Below are positions 12,921 to 58,199 of a DNA stretch of 64,000 bases, in pieces (position 1 is the first letter of the stretch; each line of letters opens with the position of its first letter). Under the pieces are notes generated by a model. The model saw nothing but the letters and a program-made list of their open reading frames with translations. It did not search any database and was not told the origin of the DNA. The DNA is from Girardia tigrina (Eukaryota). Location of the stretch: positions 1 through 64,000 of the forward strand of contig MQRK01245240.1 of NCBI GenBank assembly GCA_001938485.1. Reading direction: 5' to 3'. The position numbers and the translations under genes are program-made.

Positions 12921-12985
12921 CATATTATTTTTATATAGCATAAACATCAAATTATAAACAAATCAACTTATTGCTGTTGTATCTC

Positions 12986-14530
12986 CGCAGAGGTTCTTTT
13001 GCTTTGGAGATCAGGGAACTCATCATCCATAACACCATTACTGAGCGGACTCACACCAGCGCCAAATCCGGCCTTCCAATCGATCAGATCTTCCGAGGTA
13101 CTCGAATTCGACTCTCGGTGCCTCATTAATTTCTCCCGCTTAGCATAGTCGAGGACACAGTCGACCGAGGCGCAGTCGTCTTTCAATAATTCTTGCCAGC
13201 GTGACTCGATCTTTCTCCGTAGGTACAGGAATAATTCATTTGAGTGAACATCAAAATCAACGTGTTGCACTGAGTTATTTTGACCGAAAAAGTAATAAAA
13301 CATGATTGCAATTCTCCGAAAGTTTCCATATGTCACTCTGCACAGTGCTGGACCTTCACGCTCAACTGCAAATCGATTATCACGTTCTCGAACAAATTCA
13401 CATAGGAGTTGTATTATATTTTTCAATTTGTTTATTGCTTTTTTTATCTCAAATGAAAACTCGCAAAAGTTTTTTTACAATTATCCTCGAATTTTGAGAC
13501 AGGATGAAATTTTGACAAACAGCATTTTGCCATATCGAATGTTGTTCTTATTATTGAAAAACAATGTTGAATAAATTCATCATTGATGGAATTTCCTTCC
13601 TTGATTAAATTCAAACTGAGATTTATCATAATGGTCCTTAAAATGTATATAATTTTATTAAAGTTTTTATCGTCGATACAAAGCATAGCACATCTCCACA
13701 AATAATCTAAACCTATTAGATTTATGTTAATAACAAAATATATTTCGGGATCTCTTTCTTGAAAATTTCCCTTTTTAACATTAATTGGTCGAAAAAATTG
13801 TTCAAATAACAATATTCCACTCAATGCCAGAAGCTTAGGATCGAGCCTCAAAATATTTTTCAAGAAAAAATCTTCTTTTTCAAATAGATTATTTTCGAAT
13901 TCCATATGACTTGAAAGCCAAATAAATTTTTATTTTTTTTGAAAAATTGTGATTAATGTTTAATCGTGACGAAATAATTCAACATCCAATGACATCCCAA
14001 AAACATTTACATATGCACACGCACCCCACACACAATAACAGATCACACCTCTACCCAATCAAAACACGTCACAAAGACATTTCGATACAACATGCACATA
14101 TTTTCCTTTGGTATTCACACACACACTGAACAGTATGTACACACACATAATCATTTCATTTTTTTTATCCAAGTGACGCACTCACACAAATTATGTACAT
14201 TCATAATATTACATAATAATCTCTCAAATGATTTTCAATCATAATTATCAAAAAAAAATATTTCCAATGTTTTCAAATCCACCGTGACTCTTTGAAAACT
14301 TTTACACAGAGATTAATAAAAACCGAATTTATTTATAATATGTGATCATTTTGTTTAACTGTTCAAAATTGAATGTGTTATTGAATATTATCGTTCGAAA
14401 TTTCTAAACGTTCTTCAAGATGGCATTGAGTTGTGCTGCTTTTAAAAACGAAACCGAGGAACAAAAAAAACCGCAAAGAATCGAAAGCGGAATTCATATG
14501 GTATTTGCATCATCACAAAACCATATGAAC
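12986..14530 (-). pseudogene. USP9X: USP9X/fat facets internal fragment, no introns seen, frameshifted
   Basis: FFLKNILRLDPKLL..LIGLDYLWR..DEFIQHCF..LCEFVRERD..HSNE matches USP9X FFESNVLQLDPSLL..LIGLDYLWR..EDFIQSCF..LREYINECD..HTND. No N-terminus or catalytic domain. Confidence 0.88.
13924..14186 (-). mobile_element. Short LTR-like insertion inside the USP9X fragment
   Basis: Begins TGTGAG, TSD CAAAT (13919-13923 / 14187-14191). Removal restores IIWLSSHMEF (cf. USP9X FKWYSKLM). Confidence 0.7.
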
Positions 14531-14765
14531 GTGATGATTTCACATATATTTATTTATATACATACTTATATATATATTTATTTATTTAATTAATTTAAAT
14601 TTTATTTAAATGATTTAATTTTATTTTTCTTTTAATTATTTAATTTTTATTTACCTTAATTAATTATTTTAATTGAATTATTTAAAATATTGATTTTTAT
14701 TTTTTAACAAATGGGTTCAAAAATGAGTCAAAATAGAATCGCAACGCGACCAATTGCATATAAAT

Positions 14766-16255
14766 TGTTATCTAAGAAAATAATAAAAAAGGATTAACAC
14801 GTGAATATTTATTTCAAATGATATTCAATCGATGATTTCTGAGAATTAAAACAAATTGATTTATTTATTTTTCATAATTCTCCACTACAGCCCACACTCG
14901 AATCTCCAGTAACAATAAAATCATCGAGATAGGCTGGTCGGCGTGTTTCCCGTCGTGGTCGCACTCTTTTAGGTTCCTGATTTCTTTCTTCTACCGACTC
15001 GCCGTCATCATCATTCCCGAACTCTAGTCTCGGTGCCAATGCTTGATCCGGTTGTCGCGGTGTAATACCCGCAACATGTCGCGGGCTACAAAAACCAGTA
15101 CAATTAATCAAAAACCTTACCGAATCTAATCGTTTCATCACCGTCATCCACTGTCGTGTACAAGGTGTACTTTGATTCGGTTTTATCCACACGAGTTGGT
15201 TTTCTACAAATTTTGACTTCTCTATGTTCTCCGTTCTAACTGTCTTTCTTAGCGATTCTTATGTAGTTAGTAGATAATTATACATCTTCAGACTTGGTGG
15301 CTGCTTATTGTCGAGAGGAATATTATTTTATCACCATACTGCTTCTAAAATGTATATATTAGAACGACACGCTATTCTCATGACCGTTCTATGATTTCGC
15401 TAAATTATACCGTTCAATTTAGTCTATTTACGGTCCGAAAAATGACTTCAATATTCCATTAGTTCATTAACCTAATAAAATCATCTGAATTGAACGAACT
15501 ATAATTATCGACTAGTAGTTTTTCAGGCGCACCGCGTTCAGAAAGTACACTTGCTATTTCCGAGATAATCGAATCCAAATTGCAAAACGTCGGACCACTA
15601 CCTGAAATTAATAAACAACAATTACTCTGTTTTACTTGATTTGGTAGTCTTGTCAACTCGTCCGCCCGATTCTTCTCGCTGTATACAAATTATATCGTCA
15701 CTTCCATTTGATATTCTTGACATAACTCTTTAATGATTGCAGTCTTCTTTTAATCAACAGTTCACTGAACGTTCTTGTAAACAAATTCCTACTATCTGCT
15801 AACACTGTGGATATCCAGGATACGACCGACTTGTTTTCCGATTTAACTATTACCCTTTTCATCCCCCATTTAATACATAAGTTTAAACATTTTACTACAG
15901 CTTCCAGTTCAACTAAACTTATATGGCGGGAGTTGTCTGTTTTTCTTAACCATGATGTATCTTCGATTGTCTGACCCTTGACCTCGACTACAACACCAAT
16001 CGCAATCGAGCTTGAGTCGCATCATAAAATTTCTTCTTCGCAGTTAAATATGAACATTTCCCCCTTGCACGGGTCGGCTTCCTCGACTATTCTCATCACC
16101 CACTTGACTTTTTCTATTACCTCTTCTCCTACTTTGTCCTCTGAGTTGCCCTCACTGAGGCGTTTCATATAAGAACAAGTCGGATGTAACCATCCCGCCA
16201 CCAGGTAGATCAAATTGAATATAAATTGCGGCGTGATAAAGACGCGATATCGGTA
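14766..16255 (-). mobile_element. Degenerate Gypsy element (RNase H, integrase, 3' LTR ~14766-14896)
   Basis: CDSSSIAIG..ELEAV RNase H; ERGAPEKLLVDN and WIKPNQSTPCTRQW are homologous to the integrase at 27468-28470. Confidence 0.85.
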
Positions 16256-16800
16256 AGTAGGGAGAAAATGAGAGTTCTGGACAAATCCCTCTCCCCGAGA
16301 GGGGGGGGGCGCGACCGTTGCCATGGCCAAGGTCGCGTTTACCATAGCAACGGTCCCGATCACCCTAGCAACGGTCGCGGTTACCATGGCAACGGCCGCG
16401 GTCCCCATAGCAACGGTTACGGTTCACTTCGTAACGGTAACCATGGTCTTAGTTATCATAGCAACGGTAACCAAGGAACATAATTTTCTATATTATATGT
16501 AAAAATTACATGTATAAAACTCCTATAGTACTTAAAACATGCATCAACATTATACATAACATCTACATAATCAGCTAAGTACCTGAGCTTAGGCATCAAC
16601 ATCAAAAGTACCTTGGTTACCGTAACCATGATACATAACCTTTTAATATTATATATAAAAACAATCGATAACACCTTAGAAACCATCACCCTTACCTTAA
16701 AAACCATGAAAAACACCTTACAAATAATCGAAAACATGTAGAAACCACCAAAATTACACAAAAAAGTGCAAAAGAATATGTTGCAAACACTTCTCACATC
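16256..16800. mobile_element. Maverick/Polinton-like terminus with 21-bp subterminal repeats
   Basis: AGTAGGGAGAAAATG start and GCAACGGTCGCGGTTACCAT repeats homologous to 40546-41018. Right extent approximate. Confidence 0.65.
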
Positions 16801-16899
16801 ATCATTTCCTGTTTAGTTGTTTTCATATATAAATTGTTTAAAGCTGAATCGAATTAATAATTGCATAAGAACTCTGACAACAAGATAAAAGTTTGAACC

Positions 16900-17290
16900 C
16901 AATATATCGGCTTTCTTAAAAAATTAAAAAAAACTGGTGAAGAAAAAGTTTTGTAAGAAAAATTATCAAACTTGGTTTTATGCTAATATGATTGAAGACG
17001 ATAACATCGATCAAGAGATAGTGATTCGATATGTGACAAAGGTAGAGGAGATCAAAAGATGCAAATGTGGATGTATGAATACGGTAAAAGGAAAAGAAAT
17101 TCTCCAATACGTAACACAAGGAAACGAAACGATTAGAAAACTGTTGAAAATAAAAGAAGAACAACAAAACCAAGGGACGAAAGAGTAAAAAGAGAAGATT
17201 GAAATCGAAATTAAAAAGTCAAAAATAATAATTTTTTGGACATGTCATGAGGAAGAACATGTGGGAAGAGCATGTCGAAAAGTTAAGTGA
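16900..17290 (+). mobile_element. gag remnant with degenerate zinc knuckle
   Basis: WTCHEEEHVGRACR. Confidence 0.5.
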
Positions 17291-17714
17291 TGTGTGATTT
17301 CAATTTTTTTAATTTTAATCAGTGATCCACAAATCATTTGTGTTTTGAAAAATTGCATAAATAAAAAATAATGATCAAACAAATGAATATGATGAATAAA
17401 AAATAATAATAAATATAATTATAAAATAAAATAAGAAAATGAATTTCATTTTAAAATTTATATTGATCGATATTATTATGGTCTCACTGTTTAAATCGAT
17501 CTTTGGTGGAAAATGAGTTATGGCAAAATGGAAAAGGCGCTTACCTTATAGTTTCAAATATTTGGAATACATGTTTCAATCTTTTCAAAAGAAACCATCG
17601 CATAAGAATAACCGGAAGGATTTATCCGGAAATATAAATAACGACTTTGTATGGTGTAATTCTTCCATATAAAACAAATTGGGTCTTCCTTTAATAAATA
17701 TTTAAAGTTAATCG

Positions 17715-20018
17715 ATGAAAATATTATATCTTCTGATAATTCATATTTTGCAAGTGGTTCTGGCTATTCCCGGCGAAAGATACTTAAAGTTCTCGCCTCA
17801 TCCGTTGATTTATTCACGAGAAAACGATTATGTGATGGAACATCATGAAATAGCCGTCGATGCGTATGTTACCCAACAAATTCTAATAAAAGTTATTCGA
17901 GAACAAATTTTTACATTCCATTGTCAAGTTGAGAAACTGGAAGACGAGTTTACTCTTAGGACAGCGGAATTGTGTTGGAAGTTAAATCTTCAAGATGAAG
18001 AAAATTGCCTAAAAGTCACGAACCAGATGCTAACAATAGAGCTCAAAAGAAACATATTTCATGTCGAGTACGATAATCGAACGGGATTCTCTATACAAAA
18101 CGTCAAGGAATATCTTCATGGATTTTATTTTTGTAGATTATCAAATTATTTCGATGTGATTGAGTCAAATTTGATTGAATTTCACAATCTTGAATTCTAC
18201 AAAACCTTGTTGAAGAATTCCTTTACTTCTCACACTGATTTTGATCCTAAAAATGCCAAAAATATTTTCGATTCTCATATGTTTAACTTTGGTTTGAAAT
18301 TAAACGATGATTATCAAGCGATTCCTCAATGGATTTCTCCGGTGATGGAGGATGTGATCAACTGGAGGATTTGTCCAGTCAATTATGATGATTTTTCTTA
18401 CAGTTGGGGAGACTGTTTCCATAACGAAAAAGTATTAAAAAGAAACGTTGATTACATTCAGTTCTCGAATTATTCCATTCATTTGTTTGATCATGTTTAT
18501 TTACTCACAGATAAGTTTGTCTTGGAAAGTTTCAATGTGGTAGAGAAAGTGCCGTTGAACAAATACCCAATTAGAGGAACCTTAAAGGATGTCAAAAGTC
18601 GTGATACTGAAATTACGATTAAATCTCCGCTTTTCAATGAATTTATTATGAGAGAAGGAAACAATCAGTTTCATCAGTATAAACTGTCCGTAGCATATAC
18701 AGGAGATTTCACGAGATACACATGGTCAAAAATGTCCTACCCACTGACCTCCGACTTTCAACAAACTGAACGATCTTTGACTTTCCCTTCATTTATTACT
18801 CGGGATCACCAAGGAGAATATTTATTACAATTACGATCATCAAAAAGTGGTAAGGTATTTGAAGTAAGATTTAAAGTTTCTGTTTTATCTTTACCGAAAG
18901 TCTCCCTTGATTATCCAATGCCCCATGTACTCTACAAACTACCGAACCAGGAAGTTGATATAAAAGTACGAGTGGAAGGAAACAATTTGATAGGAACTTT
19001 TGACATCAACAACGTTCCTATAGAATTATCGAATAAAATTACACACAAAAGAAATATGAATACATTATTGGAAAAGTATAACTATTTATCGAAATTTGAG
19101 TTCCATAACACCATGGAAAAGAAAGAAGATTACCTCGATTTGAACATAAAATTATCTAAACTAAAAATTCTTGCAGAACATCGTGGACAATATTTNNNNN
19201 NNNNNNNNNNNNNNNNNNNNNNNNNNNNNNNNNNNNNNNNNNNNNNNNNNNNNNNNNNNNNNNNNNNNNNNNNNNNNNNNNNNACTGTAGACGAAACGGA
19301 CTGCAGTACCAAATGCCGCAACGACAGGGACTACCTCTTCCAATGCAATATATTCACTGAAGAATTTCTTAAAAGAAGTTTTCAAATTGATTATGAATGG
19401 AAGGTAAATGATGAAATAGCATCTAAAGTTCCTTCTTTCAAGAAGTTTATGAATGTTACAGATGGTTCACTGATTTTGAAGGAAACAGCTAGCGATCATA
19501 TGAATCAAATGAGAATCAGTTGTAGACTCACAATTTACGCTCCAATAGTCTTTGTGAACAGAAATATATTTCTTGAAGAAATTTATGATAGTGAAAATGA
19601 TGTTCAAATAAGAAATAAGTTAAACAGGACCATCACCTTTTCTTCGTCAAAGAGAACTAAAATCACGAATGACAACGTTTCTTCCTTTGTTATAAGCTGT
19701 TCGCCAATGTTCCTAACCATCGGTGTTTGCATTACTCTTTTTATCTTGTTCTTTACTACTCCCGGAGAATCTATAAAAATTGAGACTGTGTACGTACCAT
19801 CAGAATTGGATTCCCAACAGTTCCAATTAAATGACATGAATTTCCAAAATGTTCAAGATAAAGAAGTAGAAATTCCTGGTGGGAAGTTGCGACTTTTAGA
19901 AAAAAGGAATGTCGATCGTCGAAGTCGTCCTCCGATAGCTTGTGCAGATGACGATTATGACATTAACCGCCAACTGTACTACGGGAATGAAAGGGAAATT
20001 ACGACGGAAATTGATTGA
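17715..20018 (+). CDS. Intronless type-I membrane protein with divergent Ig-like domains (767 aa)
   Basis: Signal peptide MKILYLLIIHILQVVLA; Ig motifs (TFHC..W..GFYFC, YTWSK..LTF..DHQGEY, FQC..YEWKVN..GSLIL..SC); TM segment MFLTIGVCITLFILFF; ~85-aa tail. Frame is kept across an 88-nt N run. Confidence 0.85.
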   Translation: MKILYLLIIHILQVVLAIPGERYLKFSPHPLIYSRENDYVMEHHEIAVDAYVTQQILIKVIREQIFTFHCQVEKLEDEFTLRTAELCWKLNLQDEENCLKVTNQMLTIELKRNIFHVEYDNRTGFSIQNVKEYLHGFYFCRLSNYFDVIESNLIEFHNLEFYKTLLKNSFTSHTDFDPKNAKNIFDSHMFNFGLKLNDDYQAIPQWISPVMEDVINWRICPVNYDDFSYSWGDCFHNEKVLKRNVDYIQFSNYSIHLFDHVYLLTDKFVLESFNVVEKVPLNKYPIRGTLKDVKSRDTEITIKSPLFNEFIMREGNNQFHQYKLSVAYTGDFTRYTWSKMSYPLTSDFQQTERSLTFPSFITRDHQGEYLLQLRSSKSGKVFEVRFKVSVLSLPKVSLDYPMPHVLYKLPNQEVDIKVRVEGNNLIGTFDINNVPIELSNKITHKRNMNTLLEKYNYLSKFEFHNTMEKKEDYLDLNIKLSKLKILAEHRGQYXXXXXXXXXXXXXXXXXXXXXXXXXXXXXXTVDETDCSTKCRNDRDYLFQCNIFTEEFLKRSFQIDYEWKVNDEIASKVPSFKKFMNVTDGSLILKETASDHMNQMRISCRLTIYAPIVFVNRNIFLEEIYDSENDVQIRNKLNRTITFSSSKRTKITNDNVSSFVISCSPMFLTIGVCITLFILFFTTPGESIKIETVYVPSELDSQQFQLNDMNFQNVQDKEVEIPGGKLRLLEKRNVDRRSRPPIACADDDYDINRQLYYGNEREITTEID

Positions 20019-20415
20019 AATATATTCTTTTAATAGATGATATATTTTCATATTATTTTTATTAATATCCTTAGATTTTAACGTTACGATAATAATATAA
20101 AATATATAAAGCCTTAGGCTCAGTGATACTGATGCTGTCAAATGAACATTTATATTATTTACCATAATATCTCGCGTTATAGAATTGTTTGGTCTAAACA
20201 TTTGTTCTCGACATTTACGTTAATTTCTAACTTCACCTAAGAAAAAATATGATCGAGTTTGCAATCTTAACAAGGTTGGTTGAGTAGCTTTGAAAACTTC
20301 GTTTTAAGCTATAATTTGACATTATATTTCTATTAAATACTTTTCTAGATGTATCTCAGGAAAACAAAATTTGTAAAAATTTGTAATAAAAAAAATTCTT
20401 CATTTTCATTGTCTT

Positions 20416-21021
20416 TGAGAGGATTTCGAGTAACCCGAAAAATGTTTTGAATTAAATCGAAAAAAAATTTAAATACATTTAAAAATATATAAATTAAAAT
20501 ATAAAAATTTTCCGATTAGAATAAAAAAAATTTAATATAAATAATAAAAATAAAAATTTAATAAAAACAATCTAAATTAAAAAAATGGTTATTAAAATTG
20601 ATAAAAATACTTTTGACAATCAAAAAACACTTAATAAGTTTGCAGCAAAAAATCTTTAATAAAATTTGAAATAAAATAATTTGATGACAAATTTTAAAAT
20701 GATTTTAGAAATAAAAAATAGGTTTTTAATTTAAAATAACAACTTAAATAAAGTTTGGAGTAACACATTTTTAATTAAATAATAAATTTAAAAATGCAAG
20801 ACTAATTTTTTAAATTAAATGAATCAGTAAATTATTTATCTATATATATAATTCATTATTTTAAATGTATAGATTGTTTGTGCGAGAAAAATTGAAAAAT
20901 GTTCCTCAGAAATTTATTAAAAAACTTATTTAAAAATATGTTTTTTTTTGTTGTAATTAAAAAAAGGTTTTTAAAATGTCAACTTCTGATCTTTCAACTA
21001 CAAATTACCACTAACCTAACA
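20416..21021 (+). mobile_element. Solo LTR, family 3
   Basis: TGAGAGGATTTCG...CTAACA, TSD GTCTT/GTCTG, shared GTTCCTCAGAAATT motif. Confidence 0.75.
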
Positions 21022-21879
21022 GTCTGCCTTTTGATTCATCATTCGATCCTATTTGTCACTAATTTTCATATTAAGGTTATAATTTTGTGAGCCCCACATC
21101 TAGTTAACATGATCTCTTTGGAATGGTTTTTATTAAATGAGCCTCATCTCCTGTACTCACAAGGCTCACCTAGTAAGGACAAATTCTCAGTTCAAATTAA
21201 TTTGAACAATTTGTCATACAACACGGAATTTTGAAAGAAGCTCATACTCTAATGTCATCAGGTCTGGAAAATCTCTGTACTTTTTGTGACTAATATTGAA
21301 ATTTGGATGGTTATTATTATTTAGCTTCTGTAGATACAGTTCCTCATGTAGTATCCAATTCAGGTTTAACGTAGAATTAACAAATTTTGCTTGCATTCTA
21401 AGACCTCTCTCGGCAATTTCAATTTTGCTAAGTTTTCAAATCTCTGTTCATGAAGGAATATTTGGGATAGAGTTTGTTTCATCACAATCTTCGAATTTAT
21501 AAAAATTTACTCGTCTTACTCTTCCCATTAATTGATATACTTAGTATAGATGTTGGATTTCATTAAATAATTTCATAGAACTTAAAGGATTTTTCAAATA
21601 AAAAGCATTTTTATTTGAATTCAAAGTCAAAAGATTGCTTTTAGATTCAGTAAAAAGAAATTCATTTCGTTTTTCTGTGTTTTGCGTCATCTTTGAACTC
21701 ATACCTTTTTTGTTATTTTAACATTTTAGTTGTTTACAATCCAATCGAAATCTCATGAGCACATTCAAATTTGTAAGAAAGTTTCGCATAATCAAATTTA
21801 TTGCAGTAATACCTTTTTTGCAAGGGTGTCTGTACTAAGCTAATCATTCGCGATATTTACTCCTCGCATAGCTGATGCC

Positions 21880-24760
21880 CTTTTCCATTCTTTTTATTAG
21901 CTTACTTTATATATATTTGTGTGTGCGTCCATGGAATTTAGAAAACTGTTTTTGAAGGTTTTCCACTCAATGCATCTTCTTCAAACTTTGTATACTTACT
22001 CATTCTCGATAACAATAAATGATTATGTGACAATTTGATGAAAAAAACTTTTTAATATCCCAAAATTTGAAAAAACGGAAAATTCAGAGTTCCCGAACAA
22101 TATTAATTACAAGATATCTATTTATAGGTTATAAGTAGTTTATATTGATTTTTATTGTTTTTTTAATTATTTTTTTTTTAATCTTAATTTTTTTAATTTT
22201 AAAAACTTTGTTGGCAAAGTATAGTTAAATGGATTCGCTCCAATTATATGGAGCGATGAGACCCGTTTTGCGCTCTTCAATTCCGATGGACGACAATTTG
22301 CATGGCGGCGCAGTGATGAATGATTCCATCCTGATTGTGTTCTTCCAAGTACGGCGGTGGATTCATAGTGTTTTGGAGTTACTTCACAAACAAATTTTTT
22401 GTTAAATGGATTCACTGTGGTTCCTACACCATGTCTCATTGAAAAGCGTGGCCGACAAACAAACAAACAAACCCACTTTTTAGACAAAAATTATATATAT
22501 TATTTCTTAAAATATTATAAAGTTTAATCCGCTTATTATTTATTTTAAAATTCTTATTTCAAAACTTTTATTAAAATATATTAATTGTTATGAATGTAAT
22601 GTTATTTTTATATAATTATTTAATTTTTTATGGTTTTCTTTTTAATATCCCTTTTAATTTTAAAACTTTTTATATTCTTGAAACTTTTTAAAACTTTCAA
22701 TTTTAAAAATATAATAAATTATTTTGGCGAATTATAAATTTAAACTAACTTTTCATATTTTTTATTAAGAAACCCATAAAATAAAGAATATTTATTTACA
22801 TAAAAATAAGTTTTTAAAATTTATTTAACTTATTTTGTTTACCATTTCGACGACACTTTTTTTACTACTGTGTAATCGTGATAAAAATAATTATATTTAT
22901 TAAAAATTTTAATTTAATTTTTAAGTCCTTACACAAATAATTAAAGTATTTACGTCTTTTTTAATTTAGAAAATGGAAATGAATACCAAACTTAACAGTT
23001 AATATTTTAAAAATAATGAATGATATAAAAAAGAATTACGTAAAAATAAAGTCATGAAAAAATATCCAAATTCGTTTATATTGATTATTTATGTGTCCCA
23101 AAAACCGACCAATCAAATTCACTCACTGATTTTTATAAAGTTGAATTCAGATGAAGTTATTTGAATTGGTGAGAGATCAGGTAAGATTTGCTATTAAATT
23201 TGCTTTAATGTTTTATTTGATTTACTTTTTTCTTTGTTTGTTTACATTTTATATTAAACTGTTCAAGATTTAATATAAAATGAATATCAGAACAAAGAAA
23301 TAAGATATAATTGATAACATTTACTTTCTAGAATCAAAATGGAGACCACAAATAGGAGAACCATGTTGCAGAAACGCATTTTACAACACCTTAAGAATGA
23401 TATTACTAAATGTTTTGAAAGTAATTTAATTTATATTTAATAAAATATAATTTACATCCTTGTCGCGATAAGAATATCGGGCCATCGGGGAGCAGGAGAA
23501 CAATCAGAGGATTCGTCAAATGCTTTTTCGAATATTGAAGACTGAGATTAGTACAGTTTATATATCTAAATATTATCAGCAATAAATTTATCATTATTTA
23601 TTCATTTTTTTAAATTTTGAGCTTAAAAATTTTTCAAAGATTAATAAAACATTTGTTAAGTTTTAACAGAAAGCAAAAATAGATTTAGTATACATACAAA
23701 AAACTAAAATTTTCAAATACCGTTGAATATCGAATTTCCTAGCATGTGGAATTTGTGGGTACATAGAATAATTAAAGTTTAATGAACCAGGTACAATTAT
23801 GTTAAATGCGTTAAGTTTAAAAAGAAACGCAAAGTCAATATCATGTAAGTCAGGTACAGCATACTATTCAAATGTATAATATTGCTTTTAAATATTTTTA
23901 AGACAGTTTTATTAATTATTGTAAGAGTTTTATTAAATTTCAAAAACAAACTTTTTTTGCAAACTTCCCTTTAAATTAAAGGTATTATTTACAAGATATT
24001 TTTTTAAAAATCATGACATCAAGGGTTTGTCTTCGCTCATTTTGTTTAACATTCGCCTATGGTACAATAACGTATGGTATACACATCTTACTGACAAAAT
24101 TGTAAATAGCAAAATATAAATTTTACTGCCTGAAAACTTAAAATAAATATAAACTAGAATATTTAACATGATAAAATCGACAATTAAAAAAACATAACGA
24201 TTATGTATGTTCTTTTTAATCTTTGAATTTGTAACAAATGTTAAAGGTCAAAAAATATACAAATCTACAATATTATATTTTATTTATTATCTTTAATTAG
24301 TTTTTTTCAAATGAATTTCAATAATACATTTAATGAGACTTTCAATGTTCAAATTCAAGACTTAAATAGTAAATGTAAAAATTAAAATTTTTATATCCAT
24401 TCTTTATGCTGACGGAACTCTACTTTGCCATTAAAGTTTTTAAAATTTAATAATTTAAGATTTAAAAAAATTTAATTAAAAAACATTAAAAATCAATATA
24501 AACTACTTATAATTTATAAAATGATATCTTGCAATTAATTTTGTTCGGGAATTCCGAATTTTCCGTTTTTTCCCATTTTATGATCTTAAAAAGTTTTTTC
24601 GATCAAATTTTTACATAATAATTTATTGTCATCGAGAATGAGTAAGTGTGCAAAGTTTGAAGAAAATTGATTGAAAAAGAAAATGGCGTTCAAAAATAGG
24701 TTTCTAAATTCCATGGATATATATAGAAAGTGAGTTAATAAAAAGAATGGAAAAAACGGA
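21880..24760. repeat. Diverged ~345-bp inverted repeat (21880-22225 / 24418-24760) around a ~2.2-kb spacer
   Basis: Shared blocks CCATGGAATTTAGAAA, CTTACTCATTCTCGAT, TTCCCGAACAA and GGCAAAGTA in opposite orientation. Confidence 0.85.
22228..22400 (+). mobile_element. Tc1 DDE fragment
   Basis: IIWSDETRFALFNSDGRQFAWRR..FHPDC. Confidence 0.75.
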
Positions 24761-25265
24761 TATAAATTTGAAGCACAATTTTGTGAAAACATATTTTTCA
24801 TGGTCGAAAGCAGAATGTGGATGACCGAATATGCTTTACATGTGACGAAGTTGTGATGTGTTTGTTTTTAAATGTTGTGCATTGATTTGGTATAGCGAAT
24901 CTCCTCCCCAAGGGAGTGATTAATATTTGGATTCTTATTATCTTAAAATGATTTAATTTTTTATAATAATTTTTTACATTTCAGGAAGTTATCGATATTT
25001 AAAATTTAAATTTAATCACATAAATAATAATCGTATACTAAACAAATTATATTTAGAGCTTTTTTAAAATTGAATAAGAAAATTGAAATTAATCGAATAT
25101 AATAAAAAAATACTAAGTGCAATGAAAAGATTTTAGGAATTACTCAGTTGTTGCAAAAATAATGTAGGTTTTGGATTTCTTGGTATTTACCTCAATGTTA
25201 TACGATTAAAGCATATATGATGTCATGAGTCATTCGAAAGCTTAATTTATACTCTTCTAGATTTA

Positions 25266-28200
25266 TGTTGGATATTAGATATTTTAATTATTTGAAATAT
25301 TTAATATTTGCTTTTTTGATAAATATTTTGTTTGAATATTATCAATTAAACATTGTTTTGAAAATAAACTTTTCGCGTGTTACAAGCTATNNNNNNNNNN
25401 NNNNNNNNNNNNNNNNNNNNNNNNNNNNNNNNNNNNNNNNNNNNNNNNNNNNNNNNNNNNAGATTTGGCAGAAGAAATTTGAAATGATCATGAAAATCCA
25501 GAAGATTACTGATCCAGCCCCGTATCTCCCCTTTTTACTATCGGGGGTTGCACTGAACATCTATATGGAATCGGACGAGAAGACGCAAAGCAGCTGTGAT
25601 CGGTTCTCAAGATATTAAACAATTCATCCGGCCTGACTAGACGTTCTGCGTACAGTATATTAATAAACTTACAGTATCACGATGGCGAGACTATCGATGA
25701 ATATGCGTCTCAGGTGAAGATGTTAGCAACGAAGATCGACGATCTAACAAAGGCTGCATTCATGGCTGGACTGCCTTNNNNNNNNNNNNNNNNNNNNNNN
25801 NNNNNNNNNNNNNNNNNNNNNNNNNNNNNNNNNNNNNNNNNNNNNNNNNNNNNNNNNNNNNNNNNNNNNNNNNNNNNNNNNNNNNNNNNNNNNNNNNNNN
25901 NNNNNNNNNNNNNNNNNNNNNNNNNNNNNNNNNNNNNNNNNNNNNNNNNNNNNNNNNNNNNNNNNNNNNNNNNNNNNNNNNNNNNNNNNNNNNNNNNNNN
26001 NNNNNNNNNNNNNNNNNNNNNNNNNNNNNNNNNNNNNNNNNNNNNNNNNNNNNNNNNNNNNNNNNNNNNNNNNNNNNNNNNNNNNNNNNNNNNNNNNNNN
26101 NNNNNNNNNNNNNNNNNNNNNNNNNNNNNNNNNNNNNNNNNNNNNNNNNNNNNNNNNNNNNNNNNNNNNNNNNNNNNNNNNNNNNNNNNNNNNNNNNNNN
26201 NNNNNNNNNNNNNNNNNNNNNNNNNNNNNNNNNNNNNNNNNNNNNNNNNNNNNNNNNNNNNNNNNNNNNNNNNNNNNNNNNNNNNNGGAAAGGGTGTTAG
26301 AGTGGGTTTGGGTGAAGTGCAGTTGAATATAAATGGTAGGATCATTAGGGTGGAATGTTCGGTCATGGAACATTTGCCGTATGGTCTAGGGATCTTAATA
26401 GGTATTTTAGTATTTGTTTTAGGTAAATTGGGCGGCGTGAAAATTAATAAGGGTGTTATTGAGTTCGGGGAAGAGGAAATTAAAGGGATAGATAGTAGCT
26501 TGAGTTGTACTGCATTGGATGCGCCTCTTGTTAGTATAAAAAAGCATAATTTTGAAATTGAGTTTAGGGAAAATTGGTCGATTAAATGGAATTGGAAAAG
26601 TGAGGCTCCGAGTCATCTTCCGAATCGTCAATCAGTTTTTAAGGACAACAAATTAAAAAATGTTGCAACGTTGAAAATTTTAGACGGTTGGGTAGAAAAG
26701 GGTTATCTAATCGAGTACAATGAGAAAGAAATGGATAAATCGATAGGATAAATACCGATATTTGGAATATTATAGGCTAATAAATCCAAGATAAGACCCA
26801 TTTTTGATTTTAGAAAATTAAACAATTACGTGGACGTTTATAGTGGTTCTGCGGACATAAGTTTAGAAAAGCTCCGCGATTGGCGACGTAGGGGTTCGAC
26901 TTTTTCAATGCTTGATTTTTCAGAGGCGTACATGCAGATTCATGTTCATAAGGAGATGTGGCGTTACCAATCTTGTATCATTAATAACAAAAAATATGCT
27001 TTAACTAGGATGGGTTTTGGTTTAAACATTGCACCAACTATAATGACGGAAATCGTCAGGTGGATTCTGAACTCTGACACCGGGATGCGTGAAAATACTG
27101 ACTCTTATATTGATGATATTTATGTAAATGAAAGTTTCATTTCTGGTAAAGAAGTAGAAAAAGTGTTTAATAACTTCGGTCTCAAATGTAAGAAACCTGA
27201 AAAACTGCCACAAGCCAACGAAGTTCGAGTTTTAGGAATGAAAGTCTTTAAGGACCAACAAGTAGTGAGATGGAAGAGGGACAATCAGGTAAGGGATGAG
27301 CTGGATGTAGAATCAATTTCACGTCGTGAGTTATATTCGTTATGTGGACAATTAGTAGGAATACATCCGGTAGCTAATTGGCTACGTCCGTCATGTGCAT
27401 ATCTTAAACGACTTAGTTAGGGAAGGTGGGATGAAAAGATAGACGAGGAATTATTCGAGAAGATTAAATGGGTTTTAAAGACAGTGAATTAAAAAGAAGT
27501 AATTGTTTTTTATTGGTTACGAAAGATCTACTCAAGCTGCAGCAACTTCATGATAAGTGTCATTTAGGAGCAAACAGAATGCGATATCTATGTGCGAAGC
27601 AAGGAATATGTGTGTCAAACGCGGATATCAAGGATCTGATTTCAAGATGTCAAGAATGTCAATCCATTGATCCAACACCCGTAAAATGGAAAACCGGTAG
27701 ACTAAGTGTCAACGAAAACTGGACAAGACTTGCTGCGGATGTTACAAAGTACAATCAACAAAAATTTTTAAGTGTAATCGATTGTGGTCCTTCTCGCTTT
27801 GCGATATGGAAATTAATAAAGGCTGAAGACGTCAAGTCAATTGTCTCAGAATTCTCATGTTTGTTCTGTGAACGCGGGTCTCCCAAGGAACTAATTATCG
27901 ATAATTATACCACATTTCATTCGGCAGAATTCAACAAACTGATGGAAAAGTGGAACGTTCAAGTCATGTATCGTGCCATCAATCGATCTAACTGCAACGG
28001 AATAATAGAAAGGAATCATAGAATAATCAAAAGAATTGCGTCCAGATCAAATATCAACATTTTGGAAGCCTTATGGTGGTATAATAACACGCCATCTGAA
28101 GGAAAAGAAACACCAAGCTCGGCGCTATATAGGTATTTGCCCATAGGGTTAGATATAATTGAAAGAAGTGAAAATGAGCCGTTCTGTGGAAATCCAGATT

Positions 28201-28669
28201 ATGTCGAGAATCAATTAGTGTGGGTAAAACCGGAAAACAGTACACCATGTACACAGCAATGGGCCAAGGGTGTTGTCGTGAAAAGAATAGATCAAAGGAA
28301 ATATCTAGTAAATTGTAACGAATTTTGTAGTCCAAGACATATCGCAAACATTCGACCTAGACAGCCTGACTTGGTTGAAAATTCCAAGTCATACTATATG
28401 AATATGGAGGAAACTGCATCACTACCAAACAATCAAACACAAGAGGAACAATCATTGAACAGTCGGCCTAGTNNNNNNNNNNNNNNNNNNNNNNNNNNNN
28501 NNNNNNNNNNNNNNNNNNNNNNNNNNNNNNNNNNNNNNNNNNNNNNGGAGTGTTGGATATTAGATATTTTAATTATTTGAAATATTTAATATTTGCTTTT
28601 TTGATAAATATTTTGTTTGAATATTATCAATTAAACATTGTTTTGAAAATAAACTTTTCGCGTGTTACA
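25266..28669 (+). mobile_element. Gypsy LTR retrotransposon with identical 119-bp LTRs (25266-25384, 28551-28669)
   Basis: TG..CA, TSD ATTTA; gag, protease, RT (LDFSEAY, MGFG, YIDD), integrase (HHCC, DDE). Contains stops and lacks RNase H. Confidence 0.95.
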
Positions 28670-28743
28670 ATTTATTTGTCTAAAACTTACTATAATGTTT
28701 CTTTTGTTAATTATTTGCAGATGTCAAAACGTGATTTTCACAA

Positions 28744-29183
28744 TGTGAGGAATATTTTTAATATTTGATGTTTTGTGTTTGAATGTTGTTTGTTGATTTG
28801 GAAATGTGTCTCTCTTACTCAGATGGCTGATTAATATTTGAATTCTTATTATCTAAAATATTTTATGTTTAAATTTCTTTCTAATCTAAAATAATTGTAA
28901 ATTTTTAAATAAGTTAATTAATTTTATTTACAATTTTTATATAAATAAATCTAATTAAAATTTTTTAATTAATAAATAATCATTTTTATTTTTAACCAAA
29001 AGATTTTGAGTAAAAATTTTAACAAATTTGTTATTTCTCCATTTGCTTAAAATAATAGGATTAAAGTCAATAATCAATTAGTTAGAATACAATCATACGA
29101 AAGCTTTGCCAAAGATTGCCTTGAGGACAATCAAACTTGTTATGTTAATAAAAATAGGAAACGTCAAATTGGTGTTGTTAATA
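28744..29183 (+). mobile_element. Solo LTR, family 1
   Basis: TGTGAGG...GTTGTTAATA, TSD CACAA; removal restores the mariner frame. Confidence 0.92.
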
Positions 29184-30168
29184 CACAACATTTATTTCTA
29201 TGAGCTCAAGCTAGGGCGTAATGCTTTCTCAAACTGTTCGGAACATCAAAAAAGTTAGAGGCAAGGGAATTAGCGCTGGTATCGAAAGTTTCGCTCTGGC
29301 AATACCAGCCTGTAAGATAAGCCTCATGGCAGCCGGCCATCAACGATTGACAATGACAAATTGAAGGAGCTGATGGAAGCTGATCCACGCAAAACTGTTC
29401 GAGGTCTTGCAGAAGAGCTTAACGTTGATTTCTTGACCGTTGCTTGATATTTGAAGCAAATTAGAAAGTCGAAAAGCTTGATAAATTGGTGCTTCATGGA
29501 TTGAACGAAAGTCAAGAAAATTGTCTTCTGCGCAACAAGAACAAAATGTTTCTCGATCCTATTTTGACGTGTGATGAGAAGTGAATTCTCTGTGACAATC
29601 GGCGACGTTAGACACAATGGTTGGATCGCGATGAGGCTCTGCAACACTTTCCAAAACCGAAACTCCACCAAAAGAAGGTTATGATGACTGTTTAGTGGTC
29701 TGCAGCCAGTCTCATTCATACGGCTGAAACGATCACCGCAGAGAAGTACTGCCAACAAACTGATAAAATGCATAACGAGCTCCGAATTATGTACCTGAGA
29801 TTAGTCAATATATAGGGGCCAATTCTCCATTACGGCATCGCCCAGCTACACATCGCAAAACCGAGCTAAACGAATTTGGCTACGAAACTCTGCCTCATCC
29901 ACCCTTCTCACCGGACCTCTCGCCCATCAATTACCATTTTTTTAAGCATCTGGAAAACTTCCTCTAGAAAAAATGCTTCAAAAACGCTAAAAGACGCAAA
30001 AGACGCCTTTGACATTTTCATCGCACCCAGAATTCAGACGTTCTACACTAGAGGCATCAATAAACGTGTTGCTTGTTGGAAAAATGTGTTTATTATGATG
30101 GTTTCTTTTCGATTAATAAAGTTTATTCTGAGCTGAATTACATTTGCTTAACATTTCGGTTCAAAACC

Positions 30169-31239
30169 TGTTGTATCTCAGATGAAGATGAGATATATTT
30201 ATTCGTTTTGTGTTTATTTGATTTCATATTGAAGTGCAGTTTCTTTCTCTAAAAAAGACCGGTCTCAACCGTCCCACAGGTCAAGGGAACATTGTTCAAT
30301 GAATCGTCGCTGTGCTTCGTCACAATCTGTTTCTTCGACGCACTCGTACTGCAAGAATTGCTAGAGCGATTAATCGGATCGAATTGATTAGTCAAAAATA
30401 GATTGATTTGATTTCATTGAATTTTGATTTCCCGGGAACAATTTTCCCATTGACACTCTCGGTTTTGGAATAATCCTCAAACGAATTATTGATGACGCGC
30501 ATCCACAAATCGGAATGTTTAGAATTTCTCACGACAAATTCTTTATATTTTTTCAAAATAATGTTACAAGTTTTTTCAATATACGACACAAATTCATCGA
30601 TTGATAAATCTCTCAGCTCTTGAATATCTCGATTAATCAAATGTTCTTTGGTTTCCGAGTCATTGACTAATTTTATCGCTCTGTCTGGTTGAGAGGTTAA
30701 TCTGCATAAGCACCACATTTGTTGACACTGGCAAATATCATTTTCAATGGTCATTGATCTATCAGGAAGAGAAACATCGATAAAAATAGGAGGCTTCAGG
30801 TGACATTTTAAACTTTTTTTCCGAAAAGAATCTTTAGAAGCAGTCAAAATAGCTTGTATGTTTGGTGCACATTTTTAGGTAGCCAAGATATTTTAAATAT
30901 TTCATTATTCAGACTGGATGAAGCAATCCATTAAATGTCTTCTATAAACAAAATCAGTGATTTTCCTTGTTGAACTGTCGAGTGTGATCTTAAAAAATCA
31001 ATTACCAATGAGACCATCTATGTAGTTGAGGAAGGTAGTTGGTTTAATCACAATGTTATATAGATATATTTTTTTAATTTAATTTACTTTAATTACTTTA
31101 TTTTTTAATTTATATTTTTACTTTATTCAATTTTAATATTTTCATTTAATATATTCATTTAATATATTTAATATATTCATTTAATATTTTAATTTAAATT
31201 GGGCTCAATTAAGTGCCAAAGACAATCACAGCGCGAACA
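30169..31239 (-). mobile_element. Cargo-bearing LTR-like element B
   Basis: Plus strand TGTTGTATCTC...GCGCGAACA, TSD AAACC (30164-30168 / 31240-31244); splits the right end of the mariner. Confidence 0.88.
30180..31040 (-). pseudogene. Unidentified host-gene fragment, possibly AAA+ ATPase-related
   Basis: About 270 codons over broken frames; SLILFIEDI is Walker-B-like; no introns seen. Confidence 0.45.
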
Positions 31240-31689
31240 AAACCTGCATTGCTTTTGCAACAACCTAATATTATGAAATAAAATTATTTAGAGAATAAAT
31301 ATTATTTTAAAGTTTAAAATTAAAATAAGTTCGTTATAAAATATTACTACCTCTGTTTGAAAAAAAAATCCATTTCATTCAAAAATTTGTTCGAAAATTA
31401 GAGTATCATTTCAATGTTACTGTGATTTTCGAGACCACCTATTTGTAAATAACTGTTTAAAAAATGTTTAGTGTTGGTTTTTATGAATTAATTGTATTAT
31501 AAATATCATTATTATTATTATTTTCAGTAAAATCATTAAACGATTCCGAAAAAGTGGATTTATTAAAAAACATTGCTGAAAGTAAGTTTCCCTTTTTCAT
31601 AATAAACCATAATCAAAATTGAAATTATATATTTTATAAATTAACATAACTATATCAACCTACTTCATCAACTAGAAATTTGCTAATTA

Positions 31690-36339: not shown

Positions 36340-36668
36340 TACCTTAAATCACTTTAAAATAGATTTAAAATATTTTGATTAAAATATTATTATATATTTA
36401 TTGATTAAAATATATTAATTTTGAAGATATTATTTCCATTTTTAAATTGTCCAAATAATCCGACCTTTCAAAACATTCAAAATATCAATTTTCCATGCGG
36501 TTGGAAGAAACACGATCCAAAAACAACATACAAGAAACACCATTCAGAATATTCCTCACAATAACAATGCGCAGTAGACGAAAATATTTCCATTAATTTA
36601 TAAAACTTTATATACTTTTTATTATTAATATTTTTATTAATACTTTTATATCACCTTAATTATTTTAG

Positions 36669-37376: not shown

Positions 37377-37775
37377 TGTGAGGATTTCGGAAGTCTCTTT
37401 TAAATTTTTGAATTAAAGATACAAAAACATTTTAAATTAATAATAAATTATAAAAGTAGAAAATAGAAATGTAATGTAAAATACGTGAAGACGATTAAAT
37501 TTAAATATTAATATTATTTAAAAACAAATTTTTAGATAAAATTTTAAATAATGAAACTTGTAATTAATTAGATTTAAAACTTTGACGAATTAAATTTAAA
37601 ATAATAAAATTATAAAATAAAATAGATTTAAGAAGAATTAAATTAGATCTGAAAAAAGTTTATCAGAATTTATTAAACTTTAAAAAGTAAATACAAAATG
37701 AAATAAATAAATATAATAAATATAAAATTTTAACGAAGTTTAATAAAATATTTATTCAAAATAAAATACAATCTT
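37377..37775 (+). mobile_element. LTR, family 3, truncated
   Basis: TGTGAGGATTTCGG; collinear with the reverse complement of ~57790-58197. Confidence 0.75.
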
Positions 37776-37855
37776 TAATATATATATATATATATATNNN
37801 NNNNNNNNNNNNNNNNNNNNNNNNNNNNNNNNNNNNNNNNNNNNNNNATATATAT

Positions 37856-40800: not shown

Positions 40801-41100
40801 NNNNNNNNNNNNNACCTTGGCAACGCTTCTGATTGGCCGCGCGGTTCCCTAGCAACGGTCGCGATCACCTTAGCAACGGTCGCGATCACCTTAGCAACGG
40901 TCGCGTTGCCATGGTAACCACGCGGTAACTGGTTACCGTTGCCATGGCAACCGCGCGATAACTAGTTATCGACCCCCCCCGGGGGGGGGTGGTGGAGAAC
41001 ATACATTTTTCCCCTACTCCAATCTTTTGGGAGATCATAATAATCCATAATATTCTTTTGTCATTCCTGTGAGAGCAAAATAAATAAATTAGAATTTTAA
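37856..41100 (-). mobile_element. hAT (hATm-like) transposon remnant inserted in (TA)n
   Basis: TAGGGTG terminus; GAKLPSNRQVL, WEKARIPT, VHWDGKLL, CCDTTAS, RWMARAIYSLK. Right boundary approximate. Confidence 0.75.
40546..41018. mobile_element. Non-autonomous mini-Maverick/Polinton-like element
   Basis: AGTAG...CTACT termini, ~100-bp TIRs, 6-bp TSD CCAATC, internal 21-bp tandem repeats. Confidence 0.8.
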
Positions 41101-45178: not shown

Positions 45179-45961
45179 TAAAATAATATAAATTTTTATA
45201 AAGTATTTTACATTTAGAATTGTAATATCTCCCGATATTTTTTTGTGTTTTTGTTAATTTTTCTTGTACATAGTTTTTTTTGTTCATTGTGTATGACGTG
45301 TTTTTTTTGTATGTTCAACAAAGCGTTATCTTTTCGACCTGTAAATTCTATCTAACGCTTTACGAATTATTTTTGTTTTGTTTATGATCATGGATCCTTT
45401 TCTTTGAAAACGAAAGTCGACATGCAAGACATCAGATAATTTAGAAGACCTAGAAAACACCATGTGAAACCTAAATACATATCCAACTTTGATATTAATG
45501 AGACTCAAACCAATTTGTATCCTATTATTTTTAACAGAAATTAATGCTCAAGATAGAAAATTGATTTTTTTTCGTGTAAATTAAAAAAATGATGTTCTGT
45601 TTTATATATAATGAAATAAATCTTTTGAAAATTATTATCAAGAAAGAGAATCATTGTTGATTTATGTTGCTAACATCCAAAACAGAATTCAAATTTTAAA
45701 AAGACGACAGATGATCATTCCTAAGACTCTGTTTCTCATTCTCGAATAATTCGGCAGTGACAATAGAGAAAACAGACAACATAACACAGTTAAGAAGGAA
45801 CGAATGAAACTCAGAATAGCATTCATATTAGTCGTTCTATCGGGCAATAAATGGGTAATATAGATGTTAGAAGATAATGTTCTAAAAGCAATTAATACTA
45901 AGTAATAAGATTAATAATAATTAAACTTTAAAAAAATCAACACTATCGAACATTGGAAATA

Positions 45962-56245: not shown

Positions 56246-56449
56246 GATTTTGAATTTTTTAGTTTGAAAAACGATTATTTAAACAAAACTTTAATATTAC
56301 GTATTTTATTTATTACTTTTTTACAATTATTTAAATTTATATTTGTCGCGAAACATCCTCCCCCCTTCTGATCATTCATGATCAGACCAATCAGTCATAC
56401 TCAATTACCAAAGACTCCATAATTTAAACAAACAAACATACAACATATA

Positions 56450-57180: not shown

Positions 57181-57197
57181 GTTTTTCAAATTCCTTT

Positions 57198-57246
<49 letters not shown>

Positions 57247-57250
<4 letters not shown>

Positions 57251-57480: not shown

Positions 57481-57485
57481 AATGT

Positions 57486-58197: not shown

Positions 58198-58199
58198 AA

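What the first reader, a model, noticed from the sequence alone, without database searches (positions are those of the whole stretch)
12975..31239. Candidate new gene-capture system: LTR-like mobile units with host gene fragments packed between the LTR 5' part and its last 11 bp
Seen: elements A (12975-14752) and B (30169-31239) have TG..CA ends and perfect 5-bp TSDs (ATTGC, AAACC). They share a ~45-bp 5' end (TG[G/T]TCGCG.TG.GATT..TTGA.CCCA), ~200 bp of AT-rich sequence and the identical 3' tip GAGATACAACA, but their cargos are unrelated: a ~1.3-kb USP9X fragment and ~0.85 kb of another gene. Cargo reading frames are in the element's sense, show no introns, and run right up to the tip. Insertion is supported by the empty site at 1137-1141 (A) and the split mariner end (B). 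There are no real TIRs, no second LTR and no enzyme. Known: TG..CA with 5-bp TSD is the retroviral-type integrase signature; described LTR-mediated retrocopies usually lie between two LTRs, and Pack-MULEs have long TIRs and keep introns. Inference: RT switches onto a co-packaged mRNA just after priming and back to U3, building cargo into the LTR, followed by solo-LTR formation. A Ginger-like DNA route is the alternative.
Basis: partly seen in the sequence, partly recalled or inferred. Interest (0 to 1): 0.9.

Follow-up and report, generated by a model that had tools for sequence, protein, structure and literature searches.

The report
Integrase-type mobile units carrying host gene fragments
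Two small mobile DNA units in an AT-rich animal-like genome have the end signature of retrovirus-like integration, encode no enzyme, and are filled with pieces of ordinary host genes; related copies elsewhere carry other pieces, so this looks like an unusual form of a known gene-shuffling route.

Summary
A (12975-14752) and B (30169-31239) are clean insertions with TG..CA ends and exact 5-nt duplications. A has an empty paralogous site. B splits a mariner end. They share about 235 nt at one end and 11-13 nt at the other, and have no inverted or direct terminal repeats and no enzyme gene. Cargo A is a real USP9X fragment (PDB 7yxx residues 735-850, E 9.5e-18), about 0.74 kb rather than 1.3 kb. 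Cargo B is coding-like but unidentified. Four short public contigs end at the same tip next to unrelated flanks. One carries a nearly whole DHDDS coding sequence that starts in its 5'UTR. The six copies show five mosaic architectures. All pieces point with their 3' end toward the tip, all junctions are in frame, and the copies drift neutrally. A 102-nt cargo-free unit with similar ends lies at 56344-56445. Best reading: these are non-autonomous units derived from an LTR retroelement, and their bodies were built by reverse-transcriptase template switching onto host mRNAs. That makes them a variant of known LTR-mediated retroposition, not a new class. Still open: intron loss, the orientation relative to a true LTR, and whether two-LTR parents exist. 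None of the assembly gaps touches A or B.

The parts
12975..14752 (-). Unit A, whole (1778 nt), TG..CA ends
12970..12974 (.). Target-site duplication of A (ATTGC), one copy
14753..14757 (.). Target-site duplication of A (ATTGC), other copy
1137..1141 (.). Empty paralogous site of A in the other arm of the inverted duplication (single ATTGA on the strand of A)
14709..14752 (-). A: conserved ~44-nt terminus (TGGTCGCG...)
14518..14708 (-). A: AT-rich part (GC 9%), probably homologous to that of B
13918..14517 (-). A: non-coding stretch of unknown origin, including a purine-rich tract on the + strand and a small hairpin
   Evidence: no ORF, no Rfam hit
13181..13917 (-). A: USP9X/FAF-like gene fragment (end of ARM region to part of UBL1), broken by one frame change
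12986..13180 (-). A: tip-proximal module M1, shared with L001, L002 and L004; not USP9X
12975..12985 (-). A: tip GAGATACAACA
30169..31239 (-). Unit B, whole (1071 nt), TG..CA ends
30164..30168 (.). Target-site duplication of B (AAACC), one copy
31240..31244 (.). Target-site duplication of B (AAACC), other copy
31196..31239 (-). B: conserved ~44-nt terminus (TGTTCGCG...)
31050..31195 (-). B: AT-rich part (GC 7%)
30554..31049 (-). B: upstream coding-like module, unidentified, unrelated to the upstream module of L003
30180..30553 (-). B: tip-proximal module MB, 91-94% identical to L003; one frame-changing deletion and one stop relative to L003
30169..30179 (-). B: tip GAGATACAACA
56344..56445 (+). 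Unit C: 102-nt cargo-free unit, head TGTCGCG, tail ATACAACA, flanked by a perfect 6-nt duplication TATATT (56338-56343 and 56446-56451)
25266..28669 (+). Resident degenerate LTR retroelement between A and B: 119-nt LTRs (25266-25384, 28551-28669), 5-nt duplication ATTTA, RT and integrase domains, three assembly gaps inside. Not the source of the A/B ends.
29380..31275 (+). mariner copy whose inverted end is split by B
   Evidence: (I11)

Best explanation
A and B, their relatives in public contigs, and probably the short unit C are non-autonomous derivatives of an LTR retroelement. They are either solo LTRs or single-LTR-sized units. A retroviral-type integrase supplied in trans inserted them. 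Their bodies are mosaics of processed, 3'-truncated host mRNA pieces.

Inferred mechanism: DNA synthesis by the reverse transcriptase starts at the conserved tip, which is the primer-proximal end. It leaves the element template after 13-16 nt or further in, and copies co-packaged cellular mRNAs toward their 5' ends, sometimes several in turn. It then returns to the element to pick up the other conserved end (~44 nt plus the AT-rich part). Only products that keep both integrase-recognised ends can insert. That is why nothing else is shared between lineages.

Shown here: the insertions, the ends, the identity of two cargos, the single polarity, the mosaic nesting and the neutral drift.

Inferred only: the RNA origin of the cargo, the switching path, which end is U3 and which is U5, and whether two-LTR parents exist.
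For: Insertion signature:
- A and B have TG..CA ends and exact 5-nt duplications. A has an empty site, and B splits a mariner end.
- The resident LTR element in the same window also makes a 5-nt duplication.

Cargo identity:
- The upstream open piece of cargo A matches USP9X residues 735-850 in 7yxx, E 9.5e-18. It is followed by a partial UBL1 domain.
- That fragment is cut inside the domain. P0005 carries the fuller UBL1 and diverges from the element at the junction.
- L004 carries eukaryotic DHDDS from 22 nt of 5'UTR plus the ATG to about 5 codons before the stop. It has no stop, no 3'UTR and no poly(A), and is fused to modules M2 and M1 and the tip.

Spread and mosaic structure:
- Four contigs from three other samples end at the same tip and continue into unrelated flanks.
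- Six copies show five architectures. Tip-proximal modules are shared at 82-97% identity, while the upstream modules are unrelated.
- Every coding-like piece points with its 3' end toward the tip.
- Differences between copies are spread evenly over codon positions.

Precedent:
- LTR-mediated retroposition gives partial, multi-gene, 3'-truncated chimeras that spread again as non-autonomous elements (PMC5131818).
Against: - No second LTR, PBS, PPT or two-LTR parent was seen in the window or the four contigs. All six tips abut unrelated DNA.
- Described LTR-mediated retrocopies sit between two LTRs, not inside one.
- Intron loss could not be tested, because no parental locus was available.
- Junction microhomology could not be scored without the parental DNA.
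- The orientation is unsettled. A rare CGCG motif near the end (41 per 62.5 kb outside two tandem blocks) and a weak alignment trend fit the opposite orientation, in which cargo placed by plus-strand synthesis would not be inherited.
- All six junction types are in frame, and plain template switching does not predict that.
- Unit C has a 6-nt duplication, not 5.
Confidence: 0.5

Rival explanations
1. They are ordinary solo LTRs of two or three related LTR-retroelement families. The shared ends reflect integrase constraints. The gene-like bodies are old, one-off acquisitions inherited with the LTR, and there is no recurrent capture process.
For: TG..CA ends and 5-nt duplications. LTR families commonly share only their tips. 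Short LTRs exist in this genome: 119 nt in the resident element and the 102-nt unit C. Cargo evolves neutrally.
Against: Six copies show five architectures, with unrelated upstream modules joined at sharp breakpoints to shared tip-proximal modules. That implies repeated rebuilding, not a single event. No internal region, PBS or PPT follows any of the six tips.
Confidence: 0.2
2. They are non-autonomous DNA transposons moved by an integrase-related DDE transposase (Ginger or GingerRoot-like, or an undescribed relative). They picked up gene fragments at the DNA level as Pack-type elements do.
For: The unit itself behaves as the mobile entity, and no LTR pair or internal region is ever seen. Integrase-related DNA transposons have TG..CA ends, and 29% of GingerRoot copies carry gene fragments (PMC6839031).
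Against: No inverted terminal repeats. The duplication is 5 nt, against 4 or 6 for those families. All cargo has one polarity. One cargo starts in a 5'UTR and stops just short of its stop codon, like a copied mRNA. No transposase gene lies near any copy.
Confidence: 0.15
3. They are retroposons dependent on a non-LTR (LINE-type) reverse transcriptase. The conserved tip is the 3' tail that the enzyme recognises. Target-primed synthesis with template switching makes the chimeras that are variable at the 5' end and shared at the 3' end.
For: Synthesis would start at the tip, copies nest by shared 3' parts, and polarity is uniform. Such chimeras are known for LINE-mediated events.
Against: There is no poly(A) or simple-repeat tail. 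There is no tRNA, 5S or 7SL-like head. Both complete copies have TG..CA ends and exactly 5-nt duplications. Both keep the same 5' end rather than being 5' truncated. No LINE with this tail lies in the window.
Confidence: 0.08
4. This is not a mobile element at all. It is a dispersed, fast-evolving host gene family or a set of segmental duplicates that happen to share short motifs.
For: Long open frames run across the module junctions.
Against: The insertions are precise, with duplications, an empty site and a split mariner end. Homology stops exactly at the tip in six copies. Substitution is neutral.
Confidence: 0.02

Closest known systems
LTR-mediated retrocopies of metazoans (Tan et al. 2016, PMC5131818) and maize Bs1
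   Same: Partial, 3'-truncated, poly(A)-less copies of host mRNAs. Chimeras of two or more genes. Secondary spread as non-autonomous elements. Integrase-type insertion.
   Different: Those retrocopies replace part of the internal region and lie between two LTRs. Here no LTR pair or internal region is seen, and the cargo lies inside a single TG..CA unit. Junction microsimilarity and intron loss were not testable here.
Foreign sequence inside an LTR by abnormal template switching (BARE-2, Veju TRIM; review PMC13317346)
   Same: Foreign sequence ends up within the LTR itself and is then inherited.
   Different: Those inserts come from other retroelements or from unknown DNA, in plants. Here they are host coding sequences, in several lineages, in an animal-like genome.
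GingerRoot and Pack-MULE elements (PMC6839031)
   Same: Non-autonomous copies that carry gene fragments. GingerRoot also has TG..CA ends and an integrase-related enzyme.
   Different: They have inverted terminal repeats and 6-nt (GingerRoot) or longer (MULE) duplications, and their capture is thought to be at the DNA level. A and B have no inverted repeats, 5-nt duplications and a single cargo polarity.
Gene-fragment capture by LTR retrotransposons in maize (PMC2774510)
   Same: LTR elements commonly carry host gene fragments: 425 intact elements from at least 189 captures.
   Different: Those are full two-LTR elements, and none was found with fragments of more than one gene. Here the units are LTR-sized and multi-module.
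Helitron gene capture
   Same: Mosaic chains of gene fragments in a non-autonomous element.
   Different: Helitrons make no duplications, have 5'-TC and 3'-CTRR ends with a hairpin, and insert between A and T. None of that is seen here.

Membership tests
LTR of an LTR retrotransposon (solo LTR) | 5'-TG...CA-3' termini | tested here: met
   A, B and C
LTR of an LTR retrotransposon (solo LTR) | Target-site duplication of 4-6 nt | tested here: met
   5 nt in A and B, 6 nt in C
LTR of an LTR retrotransposon (solo LTR) | The same sequence occurs as a pair flanking an internal region with PBS and PPT | tested here: inconclusive
   No pair in the window. None of six tips is followed by shared sequence. 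The genome itself was not available, and the metagenome scans found nothing.
LTR of an LTR retrotransposon (solo LTR) | U3-R-U5 organisation (promoter, poly(A) site) | not testable with these tools
   Needs transcript ends. Even the orientation is unsettled.
LTR-mediated retrocopy (PMC5131818) | Partial host mRNA copy, 3' truncated, no poly(A) | tested here: met
   USP9X internal fragment. DHDDS from the 5'UTR to about 5 codons before the stop.
LTR-mediated retrocopy (PMC5131818) | Chimeras of several parental genes are possible | tested here: met
   USP9X|M1, DHDDS|M2|M1, X|M2|M1
LTR-mediated retrocopy (PMC5131818) | Flanked on both sides by retroelement sequence including both LTRs | tested here: not met
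   No LTR pair and no internal retroelement sequence in A or B
LTR-mediated retrocopy (PMC5131818) | Microsimilarity at switch points | tested here: inconclusive
   Short shared runs are visible at breakpoints between copies, but no parental DNA was available to score them.
LTR-mediated retrocopy (PMC5131818) | Introns of the parental gene are absent | not testable with these tools
   No DNA is held for the contig of P0005, and P0007 has no contig on record.
Pack-type DNA transposon (Pack-MULE, GingerRoot) | Terminal inverted repeats | tested here: not met
   The two ends share only TG.T.
Pack-type DNA transposon (Pack-MULE, GingerRoot) | Duplication of 6 nt (GingerRoot) or about 9 nt (MULE) | tested here: not met
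   5 nt in A and B. Unit C has 6.
Helitron | 5'-TC...CTRR-3' ends, 3' hairpin, no duplication, insertion between A and T | tested here: not met
TRIM / LARD non-autonomous LTR retrotransposon | Two LTRs around a short internal domain with PBS and PPT | tested here: not met
   No terminal direct repeat in A or B
LINE-dependent retroposon (SINE-like) | Pol III-type head and a poly(A) or simple-repeat tail | tested here: not met
   No tRNA, no Rfam family, and the tail is a unique 11-13-mer.

The most novel reading that the evidence does not exclude
The single TG..CA unit is itself the replicating entity. It would be a retro-mobile element reduced to two integrase ends and a promoter-like AT-rich part. 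Its copying habitually runs onto cellular mRNAs and yields in-frame mosaic reading frames, so it would act as a standing exon-shuffling engine in an animal genome. Some selection, for instance for translatable and stable RNA, would explain why every junction is in frame.
Probability: 0.15. Interest if true: 0.8.

Novelty: new variant of a known kind. Interest (0 to 1): 0.55.

Why it matters
If this reading holds, retroelement-driven shuffling of host coding sequence in animals is not limited to retrocopies lodged between two LTRs. It can also build LTR-sized units that spread and keep being rebuilt. That would give a compact natural record of template-switch junctions. The family would also be a ready test case for how much sequence an integrase and a reverse transcriptase need at each end. 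The unexplained in-frame junctions bear on whether such chimeras are filtered at the RNA or protein level.

Tried and rejected
- Other candidate 5' ends in the window (50296, 50559, 40898) are chance matches inside unrelated sequence.
- A near-tip at 42874 is within chance expectation.
- A loose scan for TG..CA pairs with 5-nt duplications gives more than 100 spurious pairs. One of them, 56344-62090, was rejected because a reading frame runs through its supposed end. Its head turned out to belong to the real 102-nt unit C.
- The resident LTR element is not the parent. Its LTR does not align with A or B beyond AT-rich background.
- The JGI metagenome scan by protein pattern found nothing. The scan by 5' terminus gave 31 hits, all prokaryote-like chance matches with no tip or duplication.
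- P0006, a repeat-rich calpain-like protein of a trypanosomatid, is a low-complexity hit and not a parent of M1.
- Cargo B, M1, M2 and the upstream modules of L002 and L003 have no Pfam or PDB match.
- The downstream piece of cargo A has no PDB match.
- I first took the AT-rich likeness for mere composition (family D7). Controls overturned that.


Full report
SCOPE AND HOUSEKEEPING. The window is AT-rich (about 23-38% GC per 2 kb). It carries mariner copies and a retroelement, and the USP9X-like fragment is only about a third identical to the human protein. I do not take it for human. The four N runs named by the scan (19196-19283, 25391-25460, 25778-26286, 28473-28546) were checked first. None lies inside A (12975-14752) or B (30169-31239). 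One interrupts an unrelated ORF and three lie in a resident LTR element. I did not fill them or infer continuity across them. I built no spliced or joined model. Broken reading frames were searched piece by piece, and I made no consensus of the units.

First, while reasoning about the TGTTGTAT-type end I recalled from memory the start of a yeast LTR. Second, while reading frames I worked out roughly where frame changes lie in the cargos, and my first notebook entry gives the bounds of the two open pieces of cargo A. This report gives only counts.

THE OBSERVATION. On the + strand A reads TGTTGTATCTC...CGCGACCA between two copies of ATTGC. B reads TGTTGTATCTC...CGCGAACA between two copies of AAACC. 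The 11-nt tip is found exactly twice in the window, at these two ends.
- The opposite ends share about 44 nt. Their local score is 16, and none of 5000 random 50-mers from the window reach it.
- The AT-rich 150-190 nt behind them (GC 7-9%) align with each other at 55, against a mean of 32.3 and a maximum of 46 for 98 AT-rich controls.
- A lies in one arm of an inverted segmental duplication (964-4062 vs 10433-14929, 93-99% identity). The other arm lacks A and has a single ATTGA at 1137-1141.
- B interrupts the inverted end of a mariner. The intact mariner end at 47216-47248 has AAACC once.
- Neither unit has inverted ends, terminal direct repeats or an enzyme ORF.
- Three of the window's 14 ORFs of 150 residues or more lie in these 2.8 kb.

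WHAT THE CARGO IS.
- Cargo A, read toward the tip, is in two open pieces separated by one frame change.
- The upstream piece matches residues 735-850 of USP9X (7yxx, E 9.5e-18) and the end of Pfam ARM_UBP24_USP9X-Y. The downstream piece matches UCH_UBL1 weakly and in the right order.
- The full-library protein search returned P0005, which has a fuller UBL1 (Pfam E 1.2e-7). It is 48-65% identical to A and L001 up to one point and unrelated after it. So the USP9X-like piece (13181-13917, about 0.74 kb) is cut inside the domain and joined to a different module, M1 (12986-13180).
- About 0.6 kb of A (13918-14517) is non-coding and unexplained.
- Cargo B is coding-like but has no Pfam or PDB match.

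OTHER COPIES. Protein searches found four short contigs from three other samples: L001 and L002 (ENA), L003 (ENA) and L004 (JGI).
- All four end at the same tip, with one or two substitutions in L001 and L004, and then run into unrelated sequence.
- Between lineages the shared tip is 13 nt, or 16 nt if a 3-nt repeat is allowed.
- L004 carries a nearly whole eukaryotic DHDDS coding sequence. It runs from 22 nt of 5'UTR and the ATG to about five codons before the stop of its closest relative P0007 (54% identity; PDB 6z1n, E 2.4e-35). It has one frame change and two internal deletions, and no stop, 3'UTR or poly(A). It is fused to modules M2 and M1 and the tip.

MOSAIC ANATOMY. Six copies give five architectures:
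- A and L001: USP9X-like|M1|tip
- L002: X|M2|M1|tip
- L004: DHDDS|M2|M1|tip
- B: Bup|MB|tip
- L003: L3up|MB|tip

Tip-proximal modules are 82-97% identical between copies. Upstream of sharp breakpoints there is no similarity, even at the protein level. Every coding-like piece points with its 3' end toward the tip, and all six junction types keep an open frame. Differences between copies fall evenly on the three codon positions, and most changed codons are non-synonymous. So the proteins are not conserved.

A CARGO-FREE RELATIVE. Only six heads of the form TG(G/T)TCGCG and eight ATACAACA tails exist in the window. Besides A and B, one head and one tail lie 102 nt apart on the + strand (56344-56445) between two perfect copies of TATATT. 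I estimate the chance of this at about 1 in 1000. It looks like a short solo unit of a related family.

THE RESIDENT RETROELEMENT. Between A and B lies a degenerate LTR element (25266-28669, + strand). It has 119-nt LTRs, a 5-nt duplication ATTTA, and RT and integrase domains. Its pol is in three open pieces: I counted three stops in the RT frame and at least one frame change before the integrase. Three assembly gaps cover 653 of its 3404 nt. It shows that 5-nt duplications are what LTR integrases make in this genome. Its LTR is not alignable with A or B beyond background.

MECHANISM. The signature points to a retroviral-type integrase: TG..CA ends, 5 nt duplicated, asymmetric ends. The cargo is 3'-truncated, one piece starts in a 5'UTR, polarity is single, and copies share tip-proximal parts while differing farther away. 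All of this fits DNA synthesis that begins at the tip and moves onto mRNA templates toward their 5' ends, with switches at various depths. This is the logic of LTR-mediated retroposition, in which multi-gene chimeras and secondary spread are documented (PMC5131818). Foreign sequence is also known to enter LTRs by abnormal switching (PMC13317346).

Which priming event is involved stays open. That fits the multi-copy lineages. If the tip is the U3 start, the geometry is equally good for plus-strand synthesis, but the cargo would not be inherited. Yet the rare CGCG near the far end matches the resident LTR in that second orientation, and a weak alignment trend agrees with it (26 and 24 against 19.1, sd 3.2). 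I therefore commit to the template-switch origin and integrase insertion at about 0.5. I leave the orientation and the solo-LTR versus self-contained-unit question open.

RIVALS.
- Plain solo LTRs with one-off old acquisitions (0.2): weakened by five architectures in six copies.
- An integrase-related DNA transposon with Pack-type capture (0.15): it has a precedent in GingerRoot, but there are no inverted repeats, the duplication length is wrong, and polarity is uniform.
- A LINE-type route (0.08): there is no tail and no pol III head, and both complete copies have 5-nt duplications and full 5' ends.
- A non-mobile gene family (0.02): contradicted by the empty site.

NOVELTY. Gene capture by LTR elements is well known in plants (PMC2774510) and described in animals (PMC5131818). 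What differs here is the packaging inside a single LTR-sized unit, the repeated rebuilding upstream of a retained tip-proximal module, and the in-frame junctions. I rate it a new variant of a known kind, with interest 0.55. The evidence is thin: two complete copies, one short unit and four partial contigs. The organism was not identified, and introns and junction microhomology could not be tested.

Noticed in passing
window 964-4062 and 10433-14929: Inverted segmental duplication in several blocks at 93-99% identity, around a ~6.4-kb centre that holds a C2H2-like ORF (6571-7059). A was inserted into one arm after the duplication.
   Followed up: partly
window 40546-41018 and 16293-16466: MITE-like unit with 46-nt inverted ends (98%), G/C homopolymer runs and internal 21-nt tandem repeats. 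A related tandem array lies at 16.3 kb. The repeat unit contains GGTCGCG, like the A terminus, probably by chance.
   Followed up: no
window 57724-60481, also 37653-37778: Large inverted structure with 137-nt arms at 99% identity and inner arms (58440-58529 / 59975-60064) at 100%, enclosing two overlapping ORFs without Pfam matches. An arm-like copy lies at 37.7 kb. Possibly a foldback-type transposon.
   Followed up: no
window 45959-47248: mariner copy with 33-nt inverted ends (97%) and a partial transposase ORF (Pfam Transposase_1, E 3e-24).
   Followed up: partly
window 61899-62213: Short remnant of a retroelement RT/RNase H junction on the + strand, not part of an intact element.
   Followed up: partly
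window 17715-20018: Long single-exon ORF for a signal-peptide and membrane protein with a faint Ig-like match, crossed by assembly gap 19196-19283. Whether the two sides are in frame cannot be known.
   Followed up: partly
L003:1016-1086 vs window 36472-36543: The flank of the public B-type copy resembles another place in the window (75%). This suggests a further shared repeat and a host related to the window's organism.
   Followed up: no
L004:1-23: The contig begins with about 23 nt that look like a sequencing-library adapter (my recollection, untested). The true upstream sequence of that copy is therefore missing.
   Followed up: no
A-type and B-type units (window and L001-L004): All six junction types between modules are in frame, and both tip-proximal modules read through the tip in the same frame, although the copies drift neutrally. 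This is unexplained.
   Followed up: partly
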